Below, piece by piece: positions 1,280-27,598 of a DNA stretch of 64,000 nt. Below the pieces are notes generated by a model. The model searched no databases. It was not told where the DNA came from and worked only from the letters and a program-made list of their open reading frames with translations. How positions within the stretch are numbered: position 1 is the stretch's first letter; each line of letters starts with the position of its first letter. Source of the DNA: Ylistrum balloti (lineage: Eukaryota); assembly GCF_031769215.1 (NCBI RefSeq), contig NW_026781935.1, positions 1-64,000 on the forward strand, written 5' to 3'. The translations under genes were made by a program, and so were the position numbers.

Positions 1280-3841
1280 TCACTTGATAACAAAATTGAT
1301 TAAACGGTTGGGAATCACAATTCGTTTAACAATAGTTTTATTAGTAAGCCAAGTTCGAACATTTTTTTCTTGCATGGCAAGTTTAACAAGCTCTTCTTGA
1401 TCAAGATCGGCTGTGGTTTTGATTTTACCCCTTACCTTGCCATTGATCTGAATAGGAACGACCACTACAGACAATTTTAAAGAGTTCTTCTTGTAATGAG
1501 GCCAATTACTATCTTTCAAACTTTTTTTCTCAGATTCGCCTTTTTTAGAAAGGACTTTATTGTAAATTTCTTCACAGATAAATGGAGCGAAGGGGGAGAG
1601 AATAGTTACAAATTTTCTCAAAATTTCTAAAGCATCATGAAGGTGGTGTGGATTAATTTTCTTAGCTGAAGCCTGATTTATAAAAATCATCAAACTGGAA
1701 ATGGCAGTATTGAAGTGAAATTTCTCAATGTCGTCTTCTACTTTGGCAATTGTACGATCAAGAAGAGTGTTTAACTCTTCAATGATTTGATGGGATTCTT
1801 TTTTTTGAATTGAGGAAGTTGATCCCTCAACTGAGTTTTTAAGTAAAAAGATCATCTGTGACCAGCGAACCAGTTTTAAAATAAAACGTTGGCATCCCTC
1901 AATCCCGCTTTCATTCCATTCCAAGGTCTTTTCTGCTGGAGCCGCAAAAAGAATAAACAAGCGTACACTATCTGCTCCGTATTTATCAATCATCTTAAGA
2001 GGATCAACCCCATTATTTTTGGATTTGCTCATCTTTTCCATTTTGATAACCAAGGGGACTCCTGTTTCAGGGCAAGTCTTTGGGTTTTTCCCCAATTCAT
2101 GCTGGAAAAAATACTTATTTGCTTTGGGTGAAAAGTACGAAGGTGACACTACCATGCCTTGGGTGAGTAATCTTTGAAACGGCTCTTTGGATTGAAGGAG
2201 ACCGATGTCACGAAGAGCTTTATGGAAAAACCTTGCATAAAGAAGATGCATACAAGCATGTTCGATCCCACCAATGTATTGGTCGACTGGCATCATTTTG
2301 TTTGCAATGTCCGATTTAAAGGGTTGTTCTTCGTTATGAGGGTCAAGGTAACGAAGAAAATACCAAGAAGAGCAGGTGAAGGTATCCATTGTGTCGGTTT
2401 CTCGATGATAGGCTTTACCATCTCTTTTTACTTGTGTAAAGTCTTGATTTTTTTCAAGTGGATTGATTCCACTAGTGAATTTTATATCAAGAGGCAAAAT
2501 AACTGGTAAATTAGAAAAATCTTCAGGAATGAATTCCCCATTTTCATTTTTAAGCATGGGAATTGGATTACCCCAATAACGTTGTCTTGAAATAAGCCAG
2601 TCTTTTAACTTGTATTGAACCTTGCGTTCACCTAATTTTTTTTTTTCTAGATCATCAATAATTTTGCCAATGGCTTCTTTATTAGGAAGATCATTGAAAG
2701 GGTGTGAATTACACAGCATTCCTTCACCAGTGTAAGCTTTATTATCAGAAACCTCTAAATTGGAGGGTTTTTTAATCACTGTAATAATGGAGAGTCCATA
2801 TTTCTTGGCGAAAGCAAAGTCTCTTTCATCATGTGCAGGCACACCCATAATGGTACCAGTCCCATATTCGGCTAGAACAAAGTTCGTAACATAGAGTGGT
2901 ATTTTTTCTTGGGTGTAAGGATGGATAATCATACTGCCAGTAAAAATTCCTTCTTGAACATAATCAGAGTTTTGATCAATTTTTTTGCAATCTTCAGCAA
3001 ATTTTTTGATTTTTTTATGATGATCTTCATTGCCAATTAAATAATTCAGTAAGTCGGGGTGATCAAAAGCAATCCCCATGAAAGATACACCAAAAAGTGT
3101 GTCTGGGCGAGTCGTGTAAATGGGAAAATTCTTTCCTTGGCAAGTGAAATTGATTAAGGCACCTTCACTTCTACCAATCCAATTTCTTTGCATGTTTTTA
3201 ACTCTTTCTGGCCAGCCGCCCATCTGGTCAAGCTCATCAAGGAGCTCTTGAGCATAATCGGTTATTTTGAGATACCATTGTTCAATTTCTCTTCGTTCAA
3301 CCACGGCTCCAGATCGCCAAGCTACTCCCTCATGGACCTGTTCTTTAGCAAGAACCGTTTTGTCAACAGGGTCCCAAAAGACAGCACTCTTTTTCCGATA
3401 GAAAAGTCCTTTCTCATAGAATTTGAGGAAAATCCATTGTCCCCATCGATAGTAATCAGATTGTGCGGTGCAAACTTCCTTACTCCAATCATATGAAAAT
3501 CCTAACTGTTGAAGTTGTTCCCTCATTCTGTCAATGTTAGAAAAGACCCACTTGGCAGGATGTATTTTTTTTTCAATCGAAGCGTTTTCAGCAGGGAGAC
3601 CAAAAGCATCCCATCCGATTGGATGGAGCACATTAAAGCCTTTCAACTGCTTATAGCGTGCTAGAACATCACCAATCGAATAGTTTCGTACATGACCCAT
3701 GTGAAGATCACCACTTGGGTATGGGTACATTTCAAGACAGTAAAATTTAGGTTTATTTTCTTCGTGATGGAAGCGAAAGGTATTATTGTCTCGATAAAAT
3801 TCTCTCCAAAATCTCTCTATTTTTTTAAAATTGTATTCCAT
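1280..3841 (-). CDS. leuS: Leucine--tRNA ligase
   Basis: 853 aa; MYPYPSGDLHMGH (HIGH), editing-domain YTTRPDT and GTGTIMGVPAHD, KMSKS, C-terminal QINGKVRG. Confidence 0.98.
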   Translation of the reverse strand: MEYNFKKIERFWREFYRDNNTFRFHHEENKPKFYCLEMYPYPSGDLHMGHVRNYSIGDVLARYKQLKGFNVLHPIGWDAFGLPAENASIEKKIHPAKWVFSNIDRMREQLQQLGFSYDWSKEVCTAQSDYYRWGQWIFLKFYEKGLFYRKKSAVFWDPVDKTVLAKEQVHEGVAWRSGAVVERREIEQWYLKITDYAQELLDELDQMGGWPERVKNMQRNWIGRSEGALINFTCQGKNFPIYTTRPDTLFGVSFMGIAFDHPDLLNYLIGNEDHHKKIKKFAEDCKKIDQNSDYVQEGIFTGSMIIHPYTQEKIPLYVTNFVLAEYGTGTIMGVPAHDERDFAFAKKYGLSIITVIKKPSNLEVSDNKAYTGEGMLCNSHPFNDLPNKEAIGKIIDDLEKKKLGERKVQYKLKDWLISRQRYWGNPIPMLKNENGEFIPEDFSNLPVILPLDIKFTSGINPLEKNQDFTQVKRDGKAYHRETDTMDTFTCSSWYFLRYLDPHNEEQPFKSDIANKMMPVDQYIGGIEHACMHLLYARFFHKALRDIGLLQSKEPFQRLLTQGMVVSPSYFSPKANKYFFQHELGKNPKTCPETGVPLVIKMEKMSKSKNNGVDPLKMIDKYGADSVRLFILFAAPAEKTLEWNESGIEGCQRFILKLVRWSQMIFLLKNSVEGSTSSIQKKESHQIIEELNTLLDRTIAKVEDDIEKFHFNTAISSLMIFINQASAKKINPHHLHDALEILRKFVTILSPFAPFICEEIYNKVLSKKGESEKKSLKDSNWPHYKKNSLKLSVVVVPIQINGKVRGKIKTTADLDQEELVKLAMQEKNVRTWLTNKTIVKRIVIPNRLINFVIK

Positions 3842-3874
3842 TGATTTTGTAAAACACAGAGACTTTAAAGTAAG

Positions 3875-4315
3875 TTATTTTATCTGTGAAGGAAGATCGA
3901 GAATGGCTTCTTTCAAATCGTCATATTCATGTTTTGCTTTTGAGCCATATTTTTTTAATTGCTCAAGTTCTGCTAAGGCCGCTTGCAAATAAGCTTCTCC
4001 TAAGTATTCTCTTGCTTGAGGAAATTGAGGTCTAATTTTCAAAGCCTTATGGTAGTTGGCTATTGCCTCGTCAATCTGCCCATTTTTTCTTTGTGAATAA
4101 GCGAGTTGATTTAAGGCGTCGGCATCTTTCGAATTAATTTTTAACGCTTTCTTAAAACTTTTTACTGCTTTACCATACTTTTCACTCTTAAGATATTTCA
4201 TTCCTTGATCGAAAACATCCTGAAATTTATCATCTTCAGATGAAGAACTGCTACCAGCTGCTATTACCAAGAAGGCTGCTAAGGATAGTATCCAAATTGT
4301 CATGATTTTTTTCAT
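3875..4315 (-). CDS. Small exported TPR protein
   Basis: Hydrophobic signal peptide followed by TPR helices (AVKSFKKALKINSKDADALNQLAY; AIANYHKALKIRPQFPQAREYLG). Confidence 0.8.
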   Translation of the reverse strand: MKKIMTIWILSLAAFLVIAAGSSSSSEDDKFQDVFDQGMKYLKSEKYGKAVKSFKKALKINSKDADALNQLAYSQRKNGQIDEAIANYHKALKIRPQFPQAREYLGEAYLQAALAELEQLKKYGSKAKHEYDDLKEAILDLPSQIK

Positions 4316-4472
4316 TTTTATTTACTCTTTTAATTTAAATTTATTTAAATCATATCATCATTTTTGTTGGAGAAAAAAAAGAAAAAATATTGATATTTGT
4401 AAAATTTCTTATAGTTCGATAACACTAATATATTATATAATTAAGAGTTAAAAGTTCTTTCCCTCTGATCAC

Positions 4473-12399: not shown

Positions 12400-14181
12400 G
12401 TGACAACAACTACAACAGAATATTCCATAAAAGATTTATTAGAAGCAGGTGCCCATTTTGGTCATCAAAGTGTCTATTCCAATCCAAAAATGTCGAGATT
12501 TGTCTTTATGAAAAGAAAGGGCATCCATATCATCGACCTTCAAAAAACGGTTCTTTATCTTGAAAAGGCTTGCAATCAAATTAAAAATATCGCAGCCCGC
12601 GGTGGCAAAGTTTTATTTGTAGGAACGAAGAAACAAGTCAAGGAGATTATCAAACTCAAAATTACCGGAACTAAACAGTACTACATGAATACCCGTTGGG
12701 TAGGGGGATTACTAACCAATTTTAAAGTAGTTGGTAAGTCCATTGATAAGCTAAAACATTATAATGAAATTTTAGAAAAGCCAGAACTCCAAGAGGAATA
12801 TACCAAAAATCAAATGATTAAAATCAAAAAGGAAAGGGATAAGCTTAATGAAGTTTATGAGGGAGTGATTACAATGGAGAAACTTCCAGATGCAGTTTTC
12901 ATCGTGGATATTTACCATGAAAAAAAAGCTGCTTTGGAAGCAAAGAATCTCGGCATTCCAGTTTTCTCAATCGTTGACACAAATGGTGATCCCGACCTGG
13001 TTGATCTGATTATTCCTGGGAATGATGATGCAATTCGTTCAGTGGGTATATTCATCGATTATGTTGTTAGTGCCATTAATCAAGGCGGTCAGATTTTTAA
13101 AAGGAATCGTGAAGAGGATGAACTTTTCCTTGATCAGATTAAAAATGAGGAGAAAGAAAATACTCAATTAGAAACCACTCAAGAAAAAGAAGAAGGAGAA
13201 GGACAAAAGGATAAGGTCAGCAAAAATACTGAAATAAATGATGTAAAAACAGATGAGAAGAATGTTGGAAATAAGGAAAAGAAAGAGAAAGAAGAGGTTC
13301 AGCCAACAAACAGCAATCAAAATTCTGACAATACAAATAGTTCAAGCATCAAAGCAATTGATGTCAAAAAACTTCGTGACTTGACCAATGTCAGTATGAT
13401 GGAATGCAAGAAAGCCCTTGTGCAAACCCAAGGAGATATGGAAGAGGCGGTTAAAATTCTAAAAGAAAGGGGAATGGCAGTTGCTGAGAAAAGATCTGGT
13501 AATCAAGTTAAGGAAGGTGCTGTTTTCGTCAAAGCTGAAAGAAATCAAGCTTGGATGTTTAACGCTTGTTGTGAAACTGATTTTGTTTCAAAAAGTGATC
13601 ACTTCTTAGAAATGCATAAAAAGGCTGGAGAAGAATTTGTTGCTAAGGGTAGCGATTATCTTGATAGTGATGAATTGAAAACCTTACTCAATGAGACAAC
13701 TGCCAAAACGGGAGAAAAATTAGTTGTGAGTGATGGGGTTCTTTTAAAAACGGATGGGCAATTCTTTTCTTATCTCCACTCCAATCAAAAAATTGGAGTT
13801 TTAGTTGCTTTGGATGTTGTAGAGTCGGACAAAAAAGAAATTTTAAGCGATGAGAAGATTGAAAATTTAGGCAAGGATCTTTGTTTGCAAATTGCAGCGA
13901 TGAACCCTATTGCTATTTCAATGAACAAGGTTGATCCGTCTGTGATAGAAGAGCAGAAACAGGTTTTTCTTAAGCAGATGGAGGATGACAAAAAACCTGA
14001 TAATATCAAAGAAAAGGTAATTGAAGGTAAGATCAAGAAATATTTTAGTGAAAAGTGCTTGTTGGAAATGGACTTCGTTAAAGAGGACAATAAAACAGTG
14101 GATCAACTCATTAAAGAAGTAGGTGAGCAAGTTGGTGCAAAAATTGAGGTCATTGACTTTAAAAGAAATCAAATTGGTTAA
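12400..14181 (+). CDS. rpsB-tsf: Fusion of 30S ribosomal protein S2 and elongation factor Ts
   Basis: aa 1-~230 are S2 (LLEAGAHFGH, IHIIDL, FVGTK, RWVGGLLTN, DTNGDPD, IPGNDDAIRS); ~85-aa charged linker; aa ~317-593 are EF-Ts (VKKLRDLTNVSMMECKKAL, ETDFV, IAAMNP, EKCLLEM); GTG start; no stop in between. Confidence 0.93.
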   Translation: MTTTTTEYSIKDLLEAGAHFGHQSVYSNPKMSRFVFMKRKGIHIIDLQKTVLYLEKACNQIKNIAARGGKVLFVGTKKQVKEIIKLKITGTKQYYMNTRWVGGLLTNFKVVGKSIDKLKHYNEILEKPELQEEYTKNQMIKIKKERDKLNEVYEGVITMEKLPDAVFIVDIYHEKKAALEAKNLGIPVFSIVDTNGDPDLVDLIIPGNDDAIRSVGIFIDYVVSAINQGGQIFKRNREEDELFLDQIKNEEKENTQLETTQEKEEGEGQKDKVSKNTEINDVKTDEKNVGNKEKKEKEEVQPTNSNQNSDNTNSSSIKAIDVKKLRDLTNVSMMECKKALVQTQGDMEEAVKILKERGMAVAEKRSGNQVKEGAVFVKAERNQAWMFNACCETDFVSKSDHFLEMHKKAGEEFVAKGSDYLDSDELKTLLNETTAKTGEKLVVSDGVLLKTDGQFFSYLHSNQKIGVLVALDVVESDKKEILSDEKIENLGKDLCLQIAAMNPIAISMNKVDPSVIEEQKQVFLKQMEDDKKPDNIKEKVIEGKIKKYFSEKCLLEMDFVKEDNKTVDQLIKEVGEQVGAKIEVIDFKRNQIG

Positions 14182-16434: not shown

Positions 16435-18528
16435 TTACTCGTCGAAAAACAAACTGACATAATCTGAAATTTCTTTCCTTCTTAAATGTGCCTTGTCCTT
16501 GTGAAACCAAATGTCTTGTGTTTTTCGGCATTGTTTGATATCCTTGACCCCAATACAGATAAGCCCATTCATGATTGCATAACTCATTCCTTCTCTGCTT
16601 GTTTCTCCTAATCCTTTGTTTCGTTTCTTTCTTATGAGTTGGCAATCAGATTTTTTTGCTTTGGAGATGAGAACATCATACTCGTTATCGTCTATGCAAT
16701 AGAATACTCTTTTCTTCTTGTCTGGGTTTTCCAGTTCTACTTCATAAAGGGGCGCCTCTACCATATAGATCATATTAAAACTAAAAAGCTCCGGCCAATA
16801 TTCAAAGAAAAAGCTTAAAATAAGAGAACGGATAGAGTAGCCGTCATAATCGGCATCAGTCATGATAGCAATGCGATCAAAGGTAAGGTCTTTCGGATTT
16901 TGAATCTTGTCACTAAATGGGAGTTTTAGAATGCTTACAATGTTCTTCAATTCTTCATTAGCCAAGGCTTTAGACAAAGAAAGCCCCTTGACGTTAAGGG
17001 GTTTCCCCCGGAGAGGGAAAAGCCCATGAATGGTCGGTTGACGAACAGGACGAAGTCCCGCAATGGCAGAGTCGCCTTCTCCAATAAACAAGGTTTTGAT
17101 TTCATTACTTGAAGTTGGAGTGCAAGGAATGAATTTCGGAATAGAAGTGAATGAGGTCTTCTTTAAATCTTTTTGTGCAGAATCTATATCTTTAATCTTG
17201 ACGCGTCGACTCATTTCCTCCTTAATCTTGTTGACAAGTCCCAGTCGTTTAATAATTTTATCGAGGTGTGTGTCTATCACTTCTCTGATTTCTTGTTTTA
17301 GATCGTTAATGAGGTAGGATTTATCTTGACTTTTGAATCGAGGAGCTGATAACCTAAAATTGTTATACATGTGAAAACAAGCTCGAACATCATTTCGAGT
17401 AGCACTGGTTTTTAATCTTTTCTCATAAGCAACAATGGTCGGCTTCCTCCGTGTTTCATCACAAACACGATTGACTAAATATTCGATGGCGGATCCTCCC
17501 AAGGAAACAAAGTTACTATTTACCCAAGAAAGGGTTTTGCCTTCTTCACCAACAAGAATGGATGATAATGTAAAATCTTTTTTGGGAGTTTGAAATTTTA
17601 AATGATAGTAAGGCTGAGGGGTGTTTTTAAAAATATCTTCCAATCCTTTTTTGAAAAAAAAGACCTGTTTATCCTTTTCTGTTTCAAGAACAATCTCTAG
17701 ACCTGGATTGATCATTGCTAGATCTTGAAGATACTGTGCAGTATATTTTTCATTAAATGAAGTATTTTCATTAGAAAAGTATTTGGGATCAAGTTCAAAT
17801 TCGATGGAAGTACCATGTTCATTTTTGTCCACTTGTTTTGTTGTCGTTCCCATTCCATTACTCTTCACAGTTTTTTGAAGTTGACTAATTAGCTTCCCTT
17901 CTAATTTGCTAAAATTTTTAATGCTACCATTTTCGTCAAAATGAAGAAAAAGTTTTTCTTGTAAAGAGGAAGGAATTTTGAGCTTTTCGCAGGCCTCTTT
18001 GAATGTGTCGGATATGGTGAATAGTTTGGAAAAAGATTCTCCTTGATGGGAGGTTTGGACTTTGAAATATTTGGAAACAATCCTCACCAAGGAGATCCCA
18101 ACTCCGTTTTGACCAGTGATATGTTCTTTCCGAGCTTGGTCATCGAAATTTTCACCATACATAAGGTGAAGGAAAACTTGTTCGGCATTCTTGGAAGGAA
18201 TACCTCTTCCATTGTCAACGACTTTAACACGCCTCCCTTTTTGGGATAAGCTCACCCAGAGTGTAGTCATTTTTCTTGAAGAAGGGATTTTACGATCAAT
18301 GAGATTTCGATTGTACTCATCGATGGCATTCATACAGGCTTCATCTAAGCATTTTAGCTTGGCAGGAACATCTTGAATTTCTTGATGGGATATGTCGTAA
18401 GCACCGTCTTTTTTTAGTTTAAAAAAATGTTGCTCAAAAAGAGAGGGGGAGTTCTGTCCTAACCACATGCCTGTACGAAGACGTACATGTTCGACATTCG
18501 AAAGTTTTCTGAAAATTCGCTTACTCAT
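16435..18528 (-). CDS. Type IIA DNA topoisomerase subunit B (GHKL ATPase + TOPRIM), T4/eukaryote-like
   Basis: EHVRLRTGMWLG, VPAKLKCLDEACMNAIDE, DNGRGIP, GQNGVG, EGDSA, PLRGKPLNV, IMTDADYDG, KGLGE. Confidence 0.93.
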   Translation of the reverse strand: MSKRIFRKLSNVEHVRLRTGMWLGQNSPSLFEQHFFKLKKDGAYDISHQEIQDVPAKLKCLDEACMNAIDEYNRNLIDRKIPSSRKMTTLWVSLSQKGRRVKVVDNGRGIPSKNAEQVFLHLMYGENFDDQARKEHITGQNGVGISLVRIVSKYFKVQTSHQGESFSKLFTISDTFKEACEKLKIPSSLQEKLFLHFDENGSIKNFSKLEGKLISQLQKTVKSNGMGTTTKQVDKNEHGTSIEFELDPKYFSNENTSFNEKYTAQYLQDLAMINPGLEIVLETEKDKQVFFFKKGLEDIFKNTPQPYYHLKFQTPKKDFTLSSILVGEEGKTLSWVNSNFVSLGGSAIEYLVNRVCDETRRKPTIVAYEKRLKTSATRNDVRACFHMYNNFRLSAPRFKSQDKSYLINDLKQEIREVIDTHLDKIIKRLGLVNKIKEEMSRRVKIKDIDSAQKDLKKTSFTSIPKFIPCTPTSSNEIKTLFIGEGDSAIAGLRPVRQPTIHGLFPLRGKPLNVKGLSLSKALANEELKNIVSILKLPFSDKIQNPKDLTFDRIAIMTDADYDGYSIRSLILSFFFEYWPELFSFNMIYMVEAPLYEVELENPDKKKRVFYCIDDNEYDVLISKAKKSDCQLIRKKRNKGLGETSREGMSYAIMNGLICIGVKDIKQCRKTQDIWFHKDKAHLRRKEISDYVSLFFDE

Positions 18529-19885
18529 GATCCCACTTTTTTAACATTTGAATTTCCTCTATGATAAATTCGACGAGCTTTCTATCCTTTTCACAAAGCA
18601 TGGTGAATTCTTTAAGTTTTTTCTTTGCTTCATCAATTCCCTTTAGGCATTTATTCACTTCTTCAGCGGTGAGGCGATAGATAGGAATTTCAGACAGCCA
18701 TTCATAGTGCCTAAATTGATGTTCTTTGAGGTTTTCTTCGAGCATTTTTTTACTCTTGATTGAAACAACTTTTTGATTCCACTTTTCTTTGATGAAACGG
18801 ATCAATTCATTTAGTTTATCAATTTTCTCTTTTTCAACACCAGCTAATCTTTGAAACCGTTTGATAAGGTGGATTTTACGGATGTTGCAAAATTCTTTAA
18901 TGACTTCCTCAGTGGACATTTTTTTAAGTTTCCCTTGGGAATTGATAACGTTCTGCTCCACCATTTCTTTATTCACTTTATTGAATAATTGTTGAAGTTT
19001 TGGTTGGGTTATTTTCTCACCACGTTTAAAAATCAGTTGAATCTTAAAACGATCTTTAGAGAGATCAAGGTAGTTACGAATTTCTTCTTTTTCTTTCATA
19101 AGTTCGTCTAAATAGGTGATGGTTTTCTCTCGATTCCATCCTTGAGGTGCATCCGTTAAAAACCACTGATGATTTTCTTGGCTAAAGCCAAATCCTGTGT
19201 TTAAAAAAAATTGTCCTTCTTCATTCTTTTGATAGTTTTGATAACCCTTAAATCCTTTATACCAAGGGGATATGGGTGGAATAGATTTTTTTTTCAAGGC
19301 TTGAGTCATGGCATCAACGACATCAGATAATTTATGGGACATGATATTGGATCGAAATCCAGTTGCAATGCCTCGAACCGAATTTAGTAGGATGAGAGGA
19401 ATTTTAGGCACAAAGTAAATTGGTTCTTTTGAAGTTTCATCATAATTACTTTCATAGTCGATGTCGGGAGTGGATTCAAACAAGCCGATGTCTTTGGCAA
19501 AGGCAGAAATTTTTACTTCAGTGTAGCGGGGGGAGGCAATGGCTTTGGCGTCAAGAATGTCTCCGAAAGTGCCAGATCCACTGATCAAGGGATAATTGTT
19601 GGTAAAGGGAAAGTCTTGAACCATTTGGCTAATGGCATCCTCAATAGAGGCATTACCATGTGGATGGTAGGCCATGACCATGCCGGCAACTTTCACTGTT
19701 TTAGTGAAATGTTCTCTAATCGGAGAGCTATAAATAGTCCACAAAATCCTTCTTTGTACCGGTTTAAGTCCATCAATCATATTGGGAATGGCACGAGAAT
19801 CGCAAACATACCTTGAATACCTTTTTTGATCTAAACTGATTTGATCGCTTAAATCTACTTTTTTTATTTTTTCTGCCATTTTCAC
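18521..19885 (-). CDS. Type IIA DNA topoisomerase subunit A without C-terminal pinwheel
   Basis: RAIPNMIDGLKPVQRR, YHPHG, catalytic ASPRY, GIATG, PWYKGFKG, IPIYRLT; only 454 aa. Confidence 0.93.
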   Translation of the reverse strand: MKMAEKIKKVDLSDQISLDQKRYSRYVCDSRAIPNMIDGLKPVQRRILWTIYSSPIREHFTKTVKVAGMVMAYHPHGNASIEDAISQMVQDFPFTNNYPLISGSGTFGDILDAKAIASPRYTEVKISAFAKDIGLFESTPDIDYESNYDETSKEPIYFVPKIPLILLNSVRGIATGFRSNIMSHKLSDVVDAMTQALKKKSIPPISPWYKGFKGYQNYQKNEEGQFFLNTGFGFSQENHQWFLTDAPQGWNREKTITYLDELMKEKEEIRNYLDLSKDRFKIQLIFKRGEKITQPKLQQLFNKVNKEMVEQNVINSQGKLKKMSTEEVIKEFCNIRKIHLIKRFQRLAGVEKEKIDKLNELIRFIKEKWNQKVVSIKSKKMLEENLKEHQFRHYEWLSEIPIYRLTAEEVNKCLKGIDEAKKKLKEFTMLCEKDRKLVEFIIEEIQMLKKWDHE

Positions 19886-19966
19886 TGCTTAGGTAAATTA
19901 ATAATAGTAAAGTGCGTAAAATCTAATGTCGAACCTTATGAGATTTGAGATGCACAGGAGTTTTTT

Positions 19967-25486: not shown

Positions 25487-25739
25487 AATACTGTTTTTAA
25501 TAATGATGATTACAGTAATTACTAGTTGCAAAAAAAACACTAAAATATAGTTAAAAACACTAGTTTTTATAAAAAGCAACAAAAAATTTTGAGAAAAACG
25601 AAATAATATTCGAAAAATATACTAAAATTATAGTAAATTTATAGTTTTTATATAAAAGGCATTTAAAAAATGAAAAAAGTATCAATATTTACTTTAATAC
25701 TGTTTTTAATAATGATGATTGCAGTAATTACTAGTTGCA
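25487..25739 (+). repeat. 44-bp direct repeat (25487-25530 and 25696-25739, one mismatch)
   Basis: AATACTGTTTTTAATAATGATGATT[A/G]CAGTAATTACTAGTTGCA occurs twice; the second copy encodes the chitinase signal peptide and lipobox. Confidence 0.9.
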
Positions 25740-27598
25740 GCCAAACACTATTAGATGATGGTACAGTGGAATTAGGGACACAGGTTGGTCAGCCACCAGA
25801 ATTAACACTGGTTGCTCAGCAAAGTTATTCTTCTGTTGAATCCTTTTCATCGTCTGGTAGCTCACTTGCAACTCTAGAAGTGTCTACATCTGCCGTAGAA
25901 GAGTATCAGAGTAGAATGACAGATCGTGATGGCAAGGGACAGGATGTTACTAAAGAAATAATTGCTGCGAATAAACCAGCTGAATGGAATAGTAACACAA
26001 CATATGACAAACCAGGAAATAAAGTTTTTTATTCAGACGGATCGGGTAGTCGTGGTGTCTTTATTAATGCTTGGTGGTCATCCGGTGATGCTCCAACCTT
26101 TCCCGAAAGCGGACCATGGAAATTGCTTGCTGAAACTGATGTCAATGGTAATAAATTAGATAGCATTCCCATTCGGGGTTGGAATGAAGCCATTGCCTAT
26201 ACAGCGGGAGCGTATGTTAAGCATAATAATAAATGTTATAGGGCAAAGTATTGGAGTAGAGGTAATGAACCGCCAGACCCATATCCAAACAATGCATGGG
26301 AAACTCCCTGGTCTACCAACAGTAGTTGTGCAGATGTTAATCAAGCAGTGCGAGAAGTCAATGATGTGGTAAGGCATATTGATAAAATTGATGAGGATAG
26401 TGTTGATAGAAATAATGGAGATGACGGTAAGAAAAAAACAGTTGTTAATCCACCAGCTATTCCTGCTCCACCAGAACCGAATATTATTCGGGGACCAGCG
26501 ATTGACAATATTCCTACCGTTTTGCCTGCTACTGGGTATGAGTTTTTGAGGGAAATTGATCTTAATGATTGGGATTGGTTTTTCCCACTTCGAAGTGGAA
26601 AATATGTTGAAAATGGGGGTATAAGAAATAAACCTCCTTATGCGATGACTGACGGAAGTAAAGATGTTTTTTCACTAAACAACTTTCTTAACGCAGTGCT
26701 TCTTTATAACACTTGGGCTTCGAATAATCAGTACCCTCAGTTTTTAAATGAAGGATCCAAAAAGTTACAAGCAGAAGAGTTCGTGGCTTTCTTTGCCAAG
26801 TCGGCACGAGAAACATCAGGATCCTGGGTGGGTGCCACACCTCCGTGGGCTGAAGAGGAAGTAGGTGTAGGAAATGTTTGGAAAGGTGCACTTTATTGGG
26901 TGGAAGAAGTAGGACATTCTACTGATAGCAGTGGGATAAGCCCTTCTCAACAATATGTCGATAGAGCATCATCTTTTATTCCAGCCACAGGTCGTTCTTA
27001 CTACGGAAGAGGTCCTATTCAGTTGTCCTGGAACTATAACTATGGAGCCTATTCCCAGTGGTTATATAACAATAGATTTTTTCCCGACAGAATCACTGCA
27101 GAAAACATTTTGCTTCTTAGACCAGACTATGTTGCTACAGACGGAGAAATTTCATTGATGTCGGCAATTTGGTTTTGGATGACGGCTCAAGGCCCTAAAC
27201 CGTCTTCTCATGATGTGATGTTGGGGAATATTACAAATGTTTCCACTTCTACGCAAGATCGAGGGTTACCTCAACGAAAAGATGGTGGAATAATTCCTGT
27301 TGCTCAAGGAGAAACTACTGATGAATCAGTTATTGCGGCTCGAATAGGGACTATTATAGATATTGTCAATGGTGGTTTAGAATGCAACGGACAGGCTTCA
27401 TGGCATCCAGGCCCACCCCAGAGAGTATCTTACTACAATGCTTATGGAAAATATTTGAATAATGAAAAAGGTGCTGGTATTACAATCATTTCACAGATAG
27501 GCAATGATGGCTTGTGGGGTGATAATGTCGATGATAGTTCTCATGAAAATATTAAACTTTCGACTTGTTATGCATTTAAAGCATATTACGGTTGGTAA
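25670..27598 (+). CDS. GH19 chitinase lipoprotein with two CBM5/12 (ChtBD3-like) modules
   Basis: Lipobox ITSC; aromatic CBM repeats (EWNSNTTY...NAWW; WNEAIAY...YRAKYW); Pro-rich linker; GH19 ARETSG, WVEE, YYGRGPIQLSWNYNYG, SAIWFWM, IVNGGLEC. Confidence 0.92.
   Translation: MKKVSIFTLILFLIMMIAVITSCSQTLLDDGTVELGTQVGQPPELTLVAQQSYSSVESFSSSGSSLATLEVSTSAVEEYQSRMTDRDGKGQDVTKEIIAANKPAEWNSNTTYDKPGNKVFYSDGSGSRGVFINAWWSSGDAPTFPESGPWKLLAETDVNGNKLDSIPIRGWNEAIAYTAGAYVKHNNKCYRAKYWSRGNEPPDPYPNNAWETPWSTNSSCADVNQAVREVNDVVRHIDKIDEDSVDRNNGDDGKKKTVVNPPAIPAPPEPNIIRGPAIDNIPTVLPATGYEFLREIDLNDWDWFFPLRSGKYVENGGIRNKPPYAMTDGSKDVFSLNNFLNAVLLYNTWASNNQYPQFLNEGSKKLQAEEFVAFFAKSARETSGSWVGATPPWAEEEVGVGNVWKGALYWVEEVGHSTDSSGISPSQQYVDRASSFIPATGRSYYGRGPIQLSWNYNYGAYSQWLYNNRFFPDRITAENILLLRPDYVATDGEISLMSAIWFWMTAQGPKPSSHDVMLGNITNVSTSTQDRGLPQRKDGGIIPVAQGETTDESVIAARIGTIIDIVNGGLECNGQASWHPGPPQRVSYYNAYGKYLNNEKGAGITIISQIGNDGLWGDNVDDSSHENIKLSTCYAFKAYYGW

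What the first reader, a model, noticed from the sequence alone, without database searches (positions are those of the whole stretch)
16435..19885. Chromosomal type IIA topoisomerase with T4-phage/eukaryote-like signatures and reversed gene order
Seen: A is transcribed before B with an 8-nt coupling overlap; A is 454 aa and stops without a beta-pinwheel CTD or GyrA box; no phage genes are nearby. Established (recalled): RAIPNMIDG matches T4 gp52; VP..K..DE...NA.D, PWYKGFKG and FFxYWPEL are typical of T4-like, giant-virus and eukaryotic Topo II rather than GyrA/B or ParC/E; bacterial operons usually run B then A; without the CTD it cannot supercoil like gyrase. Inference: a domesticated virus-derived enzyme acting as the decatenase in place of Topo IV, possibly with different quinolone/novobiocin sensitivity.
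Basis: partly seen in the sequence, partly recalled or inferred. Interest (0 to 1): 0.8.

Follow-up and report, generated by a model that had tools for sequence, protein, structure and literature searches.

The report
Deep-branching tail-less bacterial type II topoisomerase
This Leptospira-like bacterium (a contig inside a scallop assembly) has a two-gene DNA-untangling enzyme that lacks the DNA-wrapping tail of gyrase; all Leptospira and the predatory Bacteriovorax group share it, and it forms its own old branch beside, not inside, ordinary gyrase and topoisomerase IV.

Summary
Two translationally coupled ORFs on the minus strand encode an A subunit (18521-19885; 454 aa, probably 452 from the ATG at 19879) and a B subunit (16435-18528; 697 aa). 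They overlap by 8 nt (ATGAGTAA). A has no C-terminal domain, all catalytic motifs are intact, and the neighbours are housekeeping genes with no phage genes.

The pair is not special to this contig. It is conserved, in A-then-B order, in all Leptospira sampled (54% identity in L. interrogans) and in Leptospiraceae MAGs. A related pair in B-then-A order is chromosomal in Bacteriovoracia (Bdellovibrionota).

Every NCBIfam GyrA/ParC/GyrB/ParE model scores far below its cutoff, while phage Topo II profiles and T4/T6 and eukaryotic Topo II structures score best.

ML trees of A, of B and of B+A agree. Leptospiraceae plus Bacteriovoracia form one clade (99/92) that is sister (100/100) to a monophyletic canonical gyrase/Topo IV clade (100/100). 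Sampled phage and eukaryote/giant-virus enzymes lie outside.

An AU test rejects grouping the clade with a divergent Treponema ParCE (p=0.004). It does not reject grouping with the nearest phage lineages (p=0.08).

So this is neither ordinary ParCE nor a chimera. A viral origin is possible but not shown. The decatenase role is inferred. I found no paper describing the enzyme.

The parts
18521..19885 (-). A subunit (cleavage core: winged-helix domain with catalytic Arg-Tyr, tower, coiled-coil C-gate). It has no C-terminal DNA-wrapping domain. The likely true start is the ATG at 19879 (452 aa).
   Evidence: ORF and start. Pfam PF00521 covers residues 31-445 at 1.2e-94. The ASPRYTE active site aligns with R121-Y122 of E. 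coli GyrA. The AF2 model has pLDDT 90.3 and TM 0.80-0.87 to T4/T6 gp52, T. cruzi Topo II, ParC and GyrA cores.
16435..18528 (-). B subunit (GHKL ATPase, transducer, Toprim). Its N-terminal segment is extended as in phage/eukaryote enzymes, and there are lineage-specific inserts after the N-box and at about residues 160-235.
   Evidence: ORF. Pfam HATPase_c, Toprim and a weak DNA_gyraseB match. phrog_543 at 2e-118. Motifs E..NAIDE, DNGRGIP, GQNGVG, SQDK, EGDSA, PLRGK and TDADYDG are aligned.
18521..18528 (-). An 8-nt overlap (ATGAGTAA) between the stop of A and the start of B, giving translational coupling.
   Evidence: The A-then-B junction is also tight in L. interrogans (4-nt overlap). It is 27-60 nt in more distant relatives.
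19886..19966 (-). An 81-nt intergenic region upstream of A. It holds one weak sigma-70-like match (TCGACA-17-TACTAT, 19932..19904).
   Evidence: The number of promoter-like matches in the region is not above the shuffled expectation, so this is only a candidate.

Best explanation
The two ORFs encode the A and B subunits of a functional A2B2 type IIA topoisomerase. It belongs to a distinct, old lineage found on the chromosomes of Leptospiraceae and Bacteriovoracia.

It has the full ATP-operated two-gate machinery: GHKL ATPase, transducer, Toprim, a winged-helix domain with the catalytic tyrosine, a tower and a C-gate. It lacks the beta-pinwheel C-terminal domain that lets gyrase wrap DNA.

It should therefore pass one duplex through another without introducing negative supercoils. 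That means relaxing supercoils and decatenating or unknotting DNA, as T4 Topo II, eukaryotic Topo II and Topo IV do. Most likely it serves as the cell's decatenase alongside a separate gyrase.

In evolutionary terms it branches from the stem between the sampled phage enzymes and the canonical bacterial gyrase/Topo IV clade. That position explains its mixture of 'phage/eukaryote-like' and 'ParC-like' characters.

Shown here: the anatomy, the intact motifs, the conservation and the tree position. Inferred: the enzymatic activity, the cellular role and the direction of any transfer.
For: Anatomy and motifs.

Conservation: the A-then-B operon with both genes intact is in every Leptospira hit, including L. 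interrogans, and in many Leptospiraceae MAGs at 53-76% identity. It sits on L. interrogans chromosome I. In the closest relatives it has the same neighbours as in the window: hexapeptide transferase upstream, and cdsA-uppS-frr and the S2/EF-Ts fusion downstream.

Separate family: at 50% identity clustering the family collapses to one representative at 552 bits. The next hit scores 240 bits at 33-37% identity. All NCBIfam equivalogs are far below their cutoffs.

Second bacterial lineage: Bacteriovoracaceae, Peredibacter and Halobacteriovorax carry a related chromosomal pair.

Trees:
- A-only, 155 rows: the clade is sister to the canonical clade at 99*, and the canonical clade is supported at 100*.
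- B-only: the same topology.
- Concatenated careful tree with a site-heterogeneous model: Lepto+Bacteriovoracia 99/92, canonical clade 100/100, and the two joined at 100/100.
- Leaving out either lineage leaves the other in the same place (96 and 94).
- AU rejects a clade with Treponema ParCE (p=0.0044).

Mosaic characters.
Against: - No activity, expression or genetic data were examined, so the decatenase role rests on domain logic alone.
- I could not check whether Leptospiraceae or this bacterium lack canonical parC/parE, or that they carry gyrAB elsewhere. The window holds no other type IIA gene.
- The Leptospiraceae and Bacteriovoracia stems are long (about 1.2 changes per site), so long-branch effects on their placement cannot be excluded.
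- Canonical sampling was 30 pairs chosen by a ParC-like motif, with only one spirochete ParCE.
- The AU test does not reject a clade with the nearest phage groups (p=0.082), so 'sister of canonical' is preferred but not proven.
Confidence: 0.72

Rival explanations
1. A domesticated phage enzyme. An ancestor of Leptospiraceae, and separately or by later transfer Bacteriovoracia, captured the two-subunit Topo II of a tailed phage. That phage belonged to a lineage close to the origin of bacterial Topo IIA, and the captured enzyme became the host decatenase.
For: - A is the same length and architecture as gp52-type subunits (about 450 aa, no CTD).
- Nearly all of the 60 best non-family hits among 1.84 billion representatives are 430-480 aa gp52-like proteins. 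One of the best (P0245, 37% identity) sits in a T4-like phage contig.
- The PHROG Topo II profiles score 1e-106 and 2e-118.
- T6/T4 and eukaryotic Topo II are the best PDB sequence matches over the full length, whereas GyrA and ParC match only residues about 22-199.
- Phage/eukaryote-type indels and motifs are present: the extended B N-terminus, GQNGVG, WPEL, PWYKGF, and the absence of the canonical tower insertion.
- AU does not reject a clade with the nearest phage groups (p=0.082).
- The patchy distribution in two unrelated phyla fits transfer.
Against: - The ML trees of A, B and B+A all place the clade next to canonical bacterial enzymes, not inside any sampled phage clade (100/100).
- No viral contig holds a close relative. 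The best IMG/VR and GenBank phage matches are 31-35% identical.
- There are no phage genes or integration scars around the operon in any lineage.
- Adjacent phage pairs run B then A.
- Half of the diagnostic A-subunit columns are canonical-like.
Confidence: 0.3
2. A fast-evolving ordinary Topo IV. On this view, canonical ParC/ParE lost the CTD and diverged so far that long-branch attraction pulls it out of the canonical clade towards the viral outgroups.
For: - The DGLKPVQRRI motif is ParC-like.
- CTD-less A subunits of 477-538 aa do exist inside the canonical clade.
- The one spirochete ParCE sampled (uncultured Treponema) is also very divergent, basal in the canonical clade, and lacks the canonical tower insertion.
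- The Leptospiraceae and Bacteriovoracia stems are long.
Against: - AU rejects the cheapest nested alternative, a clade with Treponema ParCE (p=0.0044, delta lnL 52).
- Canonical monophyly excluding the clade has 100/100 support under a site-heterogeneous model and is recovered independently for A and for B.
- Regaining three phage/eukaryote-type insertion blocks in the B N-terminus, plus motifs such as WPEL and PWYKGF, by convergence is unlikely.
- All ParC and ParE equivalog models score at a fifth or less of their cutoffs.
Confidence: 0.1
3. An assembly chimera, or a phage or contaminant fragment joined to a bacterial contig.
For: The contig comes from a scallop genome assembly, so it is foreign to the host.
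Against: - GC content is even across the region.
- The same operon with the same flanking housekeeping genes is present in independent assemblies (L174, L010) and in complete L. interrogans chromosomes.
Confidence: 0.01

Closest known systems
Bacterial topoisomerase IV (ParC/ParE)
   Same: It is a two-subunit A2B2 type IIA enzyme encoded on the chromosome and lacks a GyrA box. Its predicted activity is non-supercoiling relaxation and decatenation. It has the ParC-like DGLKPVQRRI motif. The clade is the closest relative of the canonical bacterial clade in all trees.
   Different: It lies outside the canonical GyrAB/ParCE clade (100/100; AU p=0.0044 against a Treponema ParCE grouping). The CTD is absent altogether. 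It lacks the canonical tower insertion and has the phage/eukaryote-type extended B N-terminus and the WPEL and PWYKGF motifs. NCBIfam ParC and ParE models score 108-184 bits against cutoffs of 600-900.
T4-type phage topoisomerase II (gp39/gp60 + gp52; T6 two-subunit form)
   Same: The A subunit is about 450 aa with no CTD. Sequence similarity runs the full length (31% identity). It gives the best PHROG and PDB sequence matches. Several motifs and indels are shared. The expected biochemistry, ATP-dependent relaxation and decatenation without supercoiling, is the same (PMC11461880 for the T4/T6 structures).
   Different: It is chromosomal, vertically conserved across a bacterial family and has no phage neighbours. 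It does not nest in the phage clades in ML trees. Its B subunit is about 80 aa longer because of lineage-specific inserts. Its gene order is A then B.
CTD-less or CTD-reduced canonical ParC proteins, seen here as 477-538 aa proteins inside the canonical clade
   Same: They are short A subunits without a wrapping domain in bacteria.
   Different: They branch inside the canonical GyrA/ParC clade, whereas the Leptospiraceae/Bacteriovoracia type does not. Their organisms were not identified here.
Eukaryotic and giant-virus Topo II
   Same: It shares the PWYKGFKG and WPxL motifs, the extended N-terminal strap region of the ATPase and a G.NG.G ATP lid. T. cruzi Topo II is the top structural and sequence match in the PDB.
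   Different: Eukaryotic and giant-virus enzymes are single fused polypeptides. They form a separate clade (100/100) that is the most distant group in the trees.

Membership tests
Type IIA topoisomerase (Topo IIA superfamily) | A part: winged-helix domain with the catalytic Tyr preceded by Arg, a tower and a coiled-coil C-gate | tested here: met
   PF00521 covers residues 31-445. The Arg-Tyr pair in ASPRYTE aligns with GyrA R121-Y122. The AF2 model has pLDDT 90.3 and TM 0.80-0.87 to solved cleavage cores.
Type IIA topoisomerase (Topo IIA superfamily) | B part: GHKL ATPase motifs (N-box Glu/Asn, DxGxG, Gly-rich lid), a transducer Q-x-K, and Toprim E-GDSA and DxDxD | tested here: met
   LDEACMNAIDE, DNGRGIP, GQNGVG, SQDK (Thr replaced by Asp, Lys kept), EGDSA and TDADYDG are aligned. 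Pfam finds HATPase_c and Toprim.
DNA gyrase (GyrA/GyrB) | A beta-pinwheel C-terminal domain with a GyrA box on the A subunit | tested here: not met
   A ends with the C-gate. The CTD length is 0 and no GyrA-box pattern is present.
DNA gyrase (GyrA/GyrB) | A score above the NCBIfam gyrA and gyrB equivalog cutoffs | tested here: not met
   gyrA scores 154-164 bits against cutoffs of 877-902. gyrB scores 176 against 882.
Canonical topoisomerase IV (ParC/ParE) | A score above the NCBIfam parC and parE equivalog cutoffs | tested here: not met
   The best parC models score 116-153 bits against cutoffs of 598-813. parE scores 148-151 against 723-900.
Canonical topoisomerase IV (ParC/ParE) | Branches within the canonical bacterial GyrAB/ParCE clade | tested here: not met
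   The canonical clade excludes it at 100/100. AU rejects a clade with Treponema ParCE at p=0.0044.
Canonical topoisomerase IV (ParC/ParE) | Decatenation and relaxation activity, with a role in chromosome segregation | not testable with these tools
   This needs enzyme assays and genetics.
T4-type phage Topo II | A CTD-less A subunit of about 440-460 aa and a strong match to the phage Topo II profiles | tested here: met
   phrog_551 at 1.2e-106 and phrog_543 at 2e-118. Full-length 31% identity to gp52-type proteins.
T4-type phage Topo II | Branches within phage Topo II clades | tested here: inconclusive
   The ML trees place it beside canonical bacteria, not inside the phage clades. AU does not reject a clade with the nearest phage groups (p=0.082).
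T4-type phage Topo II | Encoded in a phage or prophage genome | tested here: not met
   The context is housekeeping genes in the window and in four other lineages.

The most novel reading that the evidence does not exclude
The Leptospiraceae/Bacteriovoracia enzyme could be a third cellular lineage of type IIA topoisomerases, distinct from gyrase/Topo IV and from eukaryotic Topo II. It would be either a relic of the bacterial Topo IIA that existed before the wrapping CTD and the gyrase/Topo IV split, or a capture from the phage lineage that is the closest viral relative of all bacterial Topo IIA. Either way it would be a living intermediate that could help polarise the debated phage-to-bacteria, or bacteria-to-phage, origin of gyrase.
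Probability: 0.3. Interest if true: 0.8.

Novelty: new variant of a known kind. Interest (0 to 1): 0.6.

Why it matters
Bacterial type IIA topoisomerases are usually treated as two kinds, gyrase and Topo IV. Published Topo IIA phylogenies that I could read (PMC9752973, PMC2647321) sample bacteria through gyrase and E. coli Topo IV and do not mention this group.

A conserved, CTD-less enzyme branches between the phage enzymes and all canonical bacterial ones. It offers a new outgroup or intermediate for the open question of where gyrase came from. It also gives a minimal bacterial strand-passage enzyme for mechanistic comparison with T4 and eukaryotic Topo II.

The enzyme is present in every Leptospira, including the agents of leptospirosis, where databases label it 'DNA gyrase subunit A' or 'toprim domain-containing protein'. 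The residue aligned with GyrA Ser83 is Ala in this sequence and Lys in L. interrogans. Its inhibitor profile may therefore differ from that of ordinary Topo IV, which is worth measuring on purified enzyme.

Tried and rejected
- Genome-collection scan for the taxonomic spread of the family. The scan is therefore useless for distribution. It did supply named canonical pairs, the two Bacteriovoracia loci (L014, L015) and the Treponema pair (L074).
- Viral-contig scans for a donor phage. Nothing was closer than 35% identity.
- Fold comparison. The model is good, but TM scores of 0.80-0.87 to phage, eukaryotic, ParC and GyrA cores do not discriminate.
- AU test on the full 69-taxon set with the mixture model did not finish. 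I repeated it on a 34-taxon subset.
- Identifying P0244, a 569-aa relative of the A subunit, by its context. It could not be resolved as phage or cell.
- Cluster name look-ups for nearest neighbours. Almost none carried names.
- Literature searches for a description of the Leptospira enzyme. Nothing relevant turned up.
- I could not test for canonical parC/parE or gyrAB in Leptospira, or elsewhere in this bacterium.
Full report
**What is there.** On the minus strand, an ORF at 18521-19885 (454 aa from GTG) is followed by an ORF at 16435-18528 (697 aa). An ATG two codons in, at 19879, gives MAEKIKK... and is the likelier start for the first ORF. The stop of the first ORF and the start of the second share ATGAGTAA, an 8-nt overlap.

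Pfam sees only the type IIA cleavage core (PF00521, residues 31-445) in the first protein. In the second it sees HATPase_c, a weak DNA_gyraseB match and Toprim. Nothing follows the C-gate in A: there is no beta-pinwheel domain and no GyrA box.

Alignment with reference enzymes shows every catalytic element:
- the Arg-Tyr pair in ASPRYTE;
- the ATPase N-box (E..NAIDE), DNGRGIP and a GQNGVG lid;
- the transducer Q-x-K (SQDK);
- Toprim EGDSA and TDADYDG.

An AlphaFold model of A is confident (pLDDT 90.3). It superposes on solved cleavage cores of T. cruzi Topo II, T4/T6 gp52, ParC and GyrA at TM 0.80-0.87, so the fold is standard and does not discriminate among them.

**Context and organism.** The window is ordinary bacterial chromosome. 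It holds leuS, dxs, an rpsB-tsf fusion, frr, uppS and cdsA, with cdsA convergent on the B gene. Upstream of A lie a hexapeptide transferase, aroE and a pseudouridine synthase. Further out are a sigma-54 response regulator, a GH19 chitinase, nhaA, ppc, a XerD-like recombinase, RNase P RNA, SRP RNA, one tRNA and dnaG. GC content is even.

Protein hits place the bacterium among Leptospiraceae. Earlier notes of the scan show that the assembly is a scallop genome, so this is an associated or contaminating bacterium. There are no phage genes.

**Distribution.** The short A subunit (450-490 aa) and the roughly 700-aa B subunit occur in every Leptospira species among the hits. L. interrogans, kirschneri, santarosai, the saprophytes and others are 53-56% identical to the window. 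Many Leptospiraceae and 'Spirochaetota' MAGs also have them, and the closest is 68% (A) or 76% (B) identical. Source annotations call them 'DNA gyrase subunit A', 'DNA gyrase/topoisomerase IV, A subunit', 'toprim domain-containing protein' or 'DNA gyrase subunit B'.

- In L. interrogans the genes lie on chromosome I in A-then-B order with a 4-nt overlap.
- In a distant MAG and in the closest relative the order is again A then B.
- The closest relative has the same neighbours as the window: hexapeptide transferase upstream; cdsA, uppS, frr and the S2/EF-Ts fusion downstream.

This rules out a chimera and shows long vertical inheritance.

**How far it is from known families.** All NCBIfam GyrA, ParC, GyrB and ParE models match at a fifth or less of their cutoffs. 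The phage Topo II profiles phrog_551 and phrog_543 match at 1e-106 and 2e-118.

Against PDB sequences:
- The best A matches are T. cruzi Topo II and T6/T4 gp52 over the full length. GyrA and ParC chains match only residues about 22-199.
- The best B matches are T6 gp39, T4 gp39-gp60 and human and yeast Topo II, followed by GyrB.

By BLASTP:
- A scores 172, 154 and 150 bits against three phage gp52-type proteins. It scores 134 against E. coli GyrA and 118 against ParC, the latter over the N-terminal 190 residues only.
- B scores 170 and 145 bits against phage B subunits, 117 against GyrB and 108 against ParE.

An exhaustive search of 1.84 billion 50%-identity representatives collapses the Leptospiraceae family to one representative at 552 bits. 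The score then drops to 240 bits, at 33-37% identity. Nearly all of the next 60 hits are 430-480 aa gp52-like proteins. GyrA/ParC-length proteins appear only from about rank 65.

**Nearest neighbours.**
- P0245 (37% identity) lies in a T4-like phage contig with clamp-loader, clamp and RegA genes.
- P0246 (33%) lies in a bacterial context with argS and transaldolase, directly after a 676-aa B subunit. Its family belongs to Bacteriovoracaceae, Peredibacter and Halobacteriovorax, so a second, unrelated bacterial group has a chromosomal CTD-less pair, there in B-then-A order.
- P0244 (569 aa) could not be assigned to a phage or a cell.

**Phylogeny.**
- A-core tree of 155 proteins: Leptospiraceae (99*) join P0244 and P0246. 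This group is sister (99*) to a canonical GyrA/ParC clade (100*, stem 0.76). The canonical clade also contains four CTD-less 477-538 aa proteins. Phage gp52-like clades and the eukaryote/giant-virus clade lie outside.
- B-subunit tree of 69 paired taxa: the same topology. Leptospiraceae plus Bacteriovoracia (92) are sister (86) to canonical GyrB/ParE (99*).
- Concatenated B+A tree (1071 columns, LG+C20+F+G4 PMSF, ultrafast bootstrap/SH-aLRT): canonical clade 100/100 (stem 0.68), Leptospiraceae+Bacteriovoracia 99/92, and their union 100/100. Next come fused phage-like proteins, the T4-like contig, Salicola phage SCTP-2, Xanthomonas phage X1 and the eukaryote/giant-virus clade.
- Leaving out either Bacteriovoracia or Leptospiraceae leaves the other in the same position (SH-aLRT 96 and 94). 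The placement therefore does not depend on attraction between the two long branches.

**AU tests (34-taxon subset).**
- Forcing the clade together with the most basal and divergent canonical pair, an uncultured Treponema ParE/ParC, costs 52 log-likelihood units and is rejected (p=0.0044).
- Forcing it together with the nearest phage groups costs 28 units and is not rejected (p=0.082).

**Characters.** I took columns where canonical enzymes and virus-plus-eukaryote enzymes each have their own conserved residue.
- In A, Leptospiraceae have the canonical state at 6 of 15 columns and the viral state at 6.
- In B, they have the canonical state at 4 of 18 columns and the viral state at 8.

Indels are also mixed. 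The clade has the three virus/eukaryote-type insertion blocks in the N-terminal part of B. It lacks the roughly 11-residue canonical insertion in the A tower (GPDFPT...), and PWYKGFKG sits there exactly as in giant-virus and eukaryotic enzymes. It does share some canonical-type insertions. DGLKPVQRRI, however, is ParC-like. This mosaic is what a lineage branching from the stem between the two groups should show.

**Interpretation.** The enzyme is a functional type IIA topoisomerase without a DNA-wrapping domain. By the established role of the GyrA CTD in wrapping and supercoiling (summarised in PMC2647321), it should relax and decatenate rather than supercoil. T4 Topo II behaves this way, and its two- and three-subunit structures are known (PMC11461880).

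Its universal retention in a bacterial family, with tight translational coupling, argues for an essential housekeeping role, most plausibly the decatenase role. This is an inference. I could not verify that these genomes lack canonical ParCE or that they carry gyrAB elsewhere.

The positive claim of viral derivation is not demonstrated either. The preferred position is sister to all canonical bacterial enzymes, and no close viral relative exists in GenBank phages or IMG/VR.

The reversed gene order is conserved in Leptospiraceae but is not diagnostic. Bacteriovoracia run B then A, and canonical pairs in Hyalangium, a Planctomycetota MAG and a Nannocystineae MAG run A then B.

**Novelty.** The proteins are in public databases under generic gyrase names. 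Eight literature searches and two Topo IIA phylogeny papers (PMC9752973, PMC2647321) gave no description of this lineage. The library does not cover subscription journals, so an earlier mention cannot be excluded. I class it as a new variant of a known kind.

**Caveats.**
- The clade has long stems.
- Canonical sampling is limited and motif-biased, with one spirochete ParCE.
- Most reference proteins are unnamed metagenomic sequences.
- The trees are unrooted.
- There are no experimental data.

Noticed in passing
window 12400-14181 (+): A single 593-aa ORF joins ribosomal protein S2, a Glu/Lys/Asn-rich linker and elongation factor Ts. The closest relative (L174) has the same fused gene. The scan has already noted and followed this up (s1-262743).
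   Followed up: partly
whole window: The contig is a Leptospiraceae-like bacterial chromosome fragment sitting in a scallop genome assembly. A GH19 chitinase with a CBM5/12 module lies at 25670-27598.
   Followed up: no
L074 (uncultured Treponema sp.), B 493-2322, A 2297-4321: This spirochete ParE (610 aa) and ParC (675 aa) pair is very divergent, with a terminal branch of 1.4. It is basal in the canonical clade and lacks the canonical 'GPDFPT' tower insertion.
   Followed up: partly
L013, L014, L015 (Bacteriovoracaceae MAG, Bacteriovorax stolpii, Halobacteriovorax): Predatory Bacteriovoracia carry a chromosomal CTD-less type IIA pair (B 676-710 aa, then A 474-481 aa). It is the sister of the Leptospiraceae enzyme.
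   Followed up: yes
L011 10001-11710: P0244, a 569-aa relative of the A subunit with a low-complexity tail, lies among very large unannotated ORFs (1233 and more than 1362 aa), a UvsX/RecA-like gene and an SbcD-like gene. No B subunit lies within 10 kb. Whether it is phage or cellular is unknown.
   Followed up: partly
P0257, P0258, P0259, P0261: Single-chain B-A fusions of 1050-1087 aa fall inside the phage gp52-like clade, separate from the eukaryote/giant-virus fused enzymes. This suggests an independent fusion of the subunits.
   Followed up: no
L021, L031, L053: Canonical type IIA pairs in Hyalangium (Myxococcota), a Planctomycetota MAG and a Nannocystineae MAG are arranged A then B.
   Followed up: no
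window 18521-19885 and 16435-18528: The public gene calls for this contig are shorter than the ORFs: P0001 is 419 aa and P0121 is 677 aa. They start inside conserved N-terminal sequence, so they are probably start-site miscalls.
   Followed up: partly
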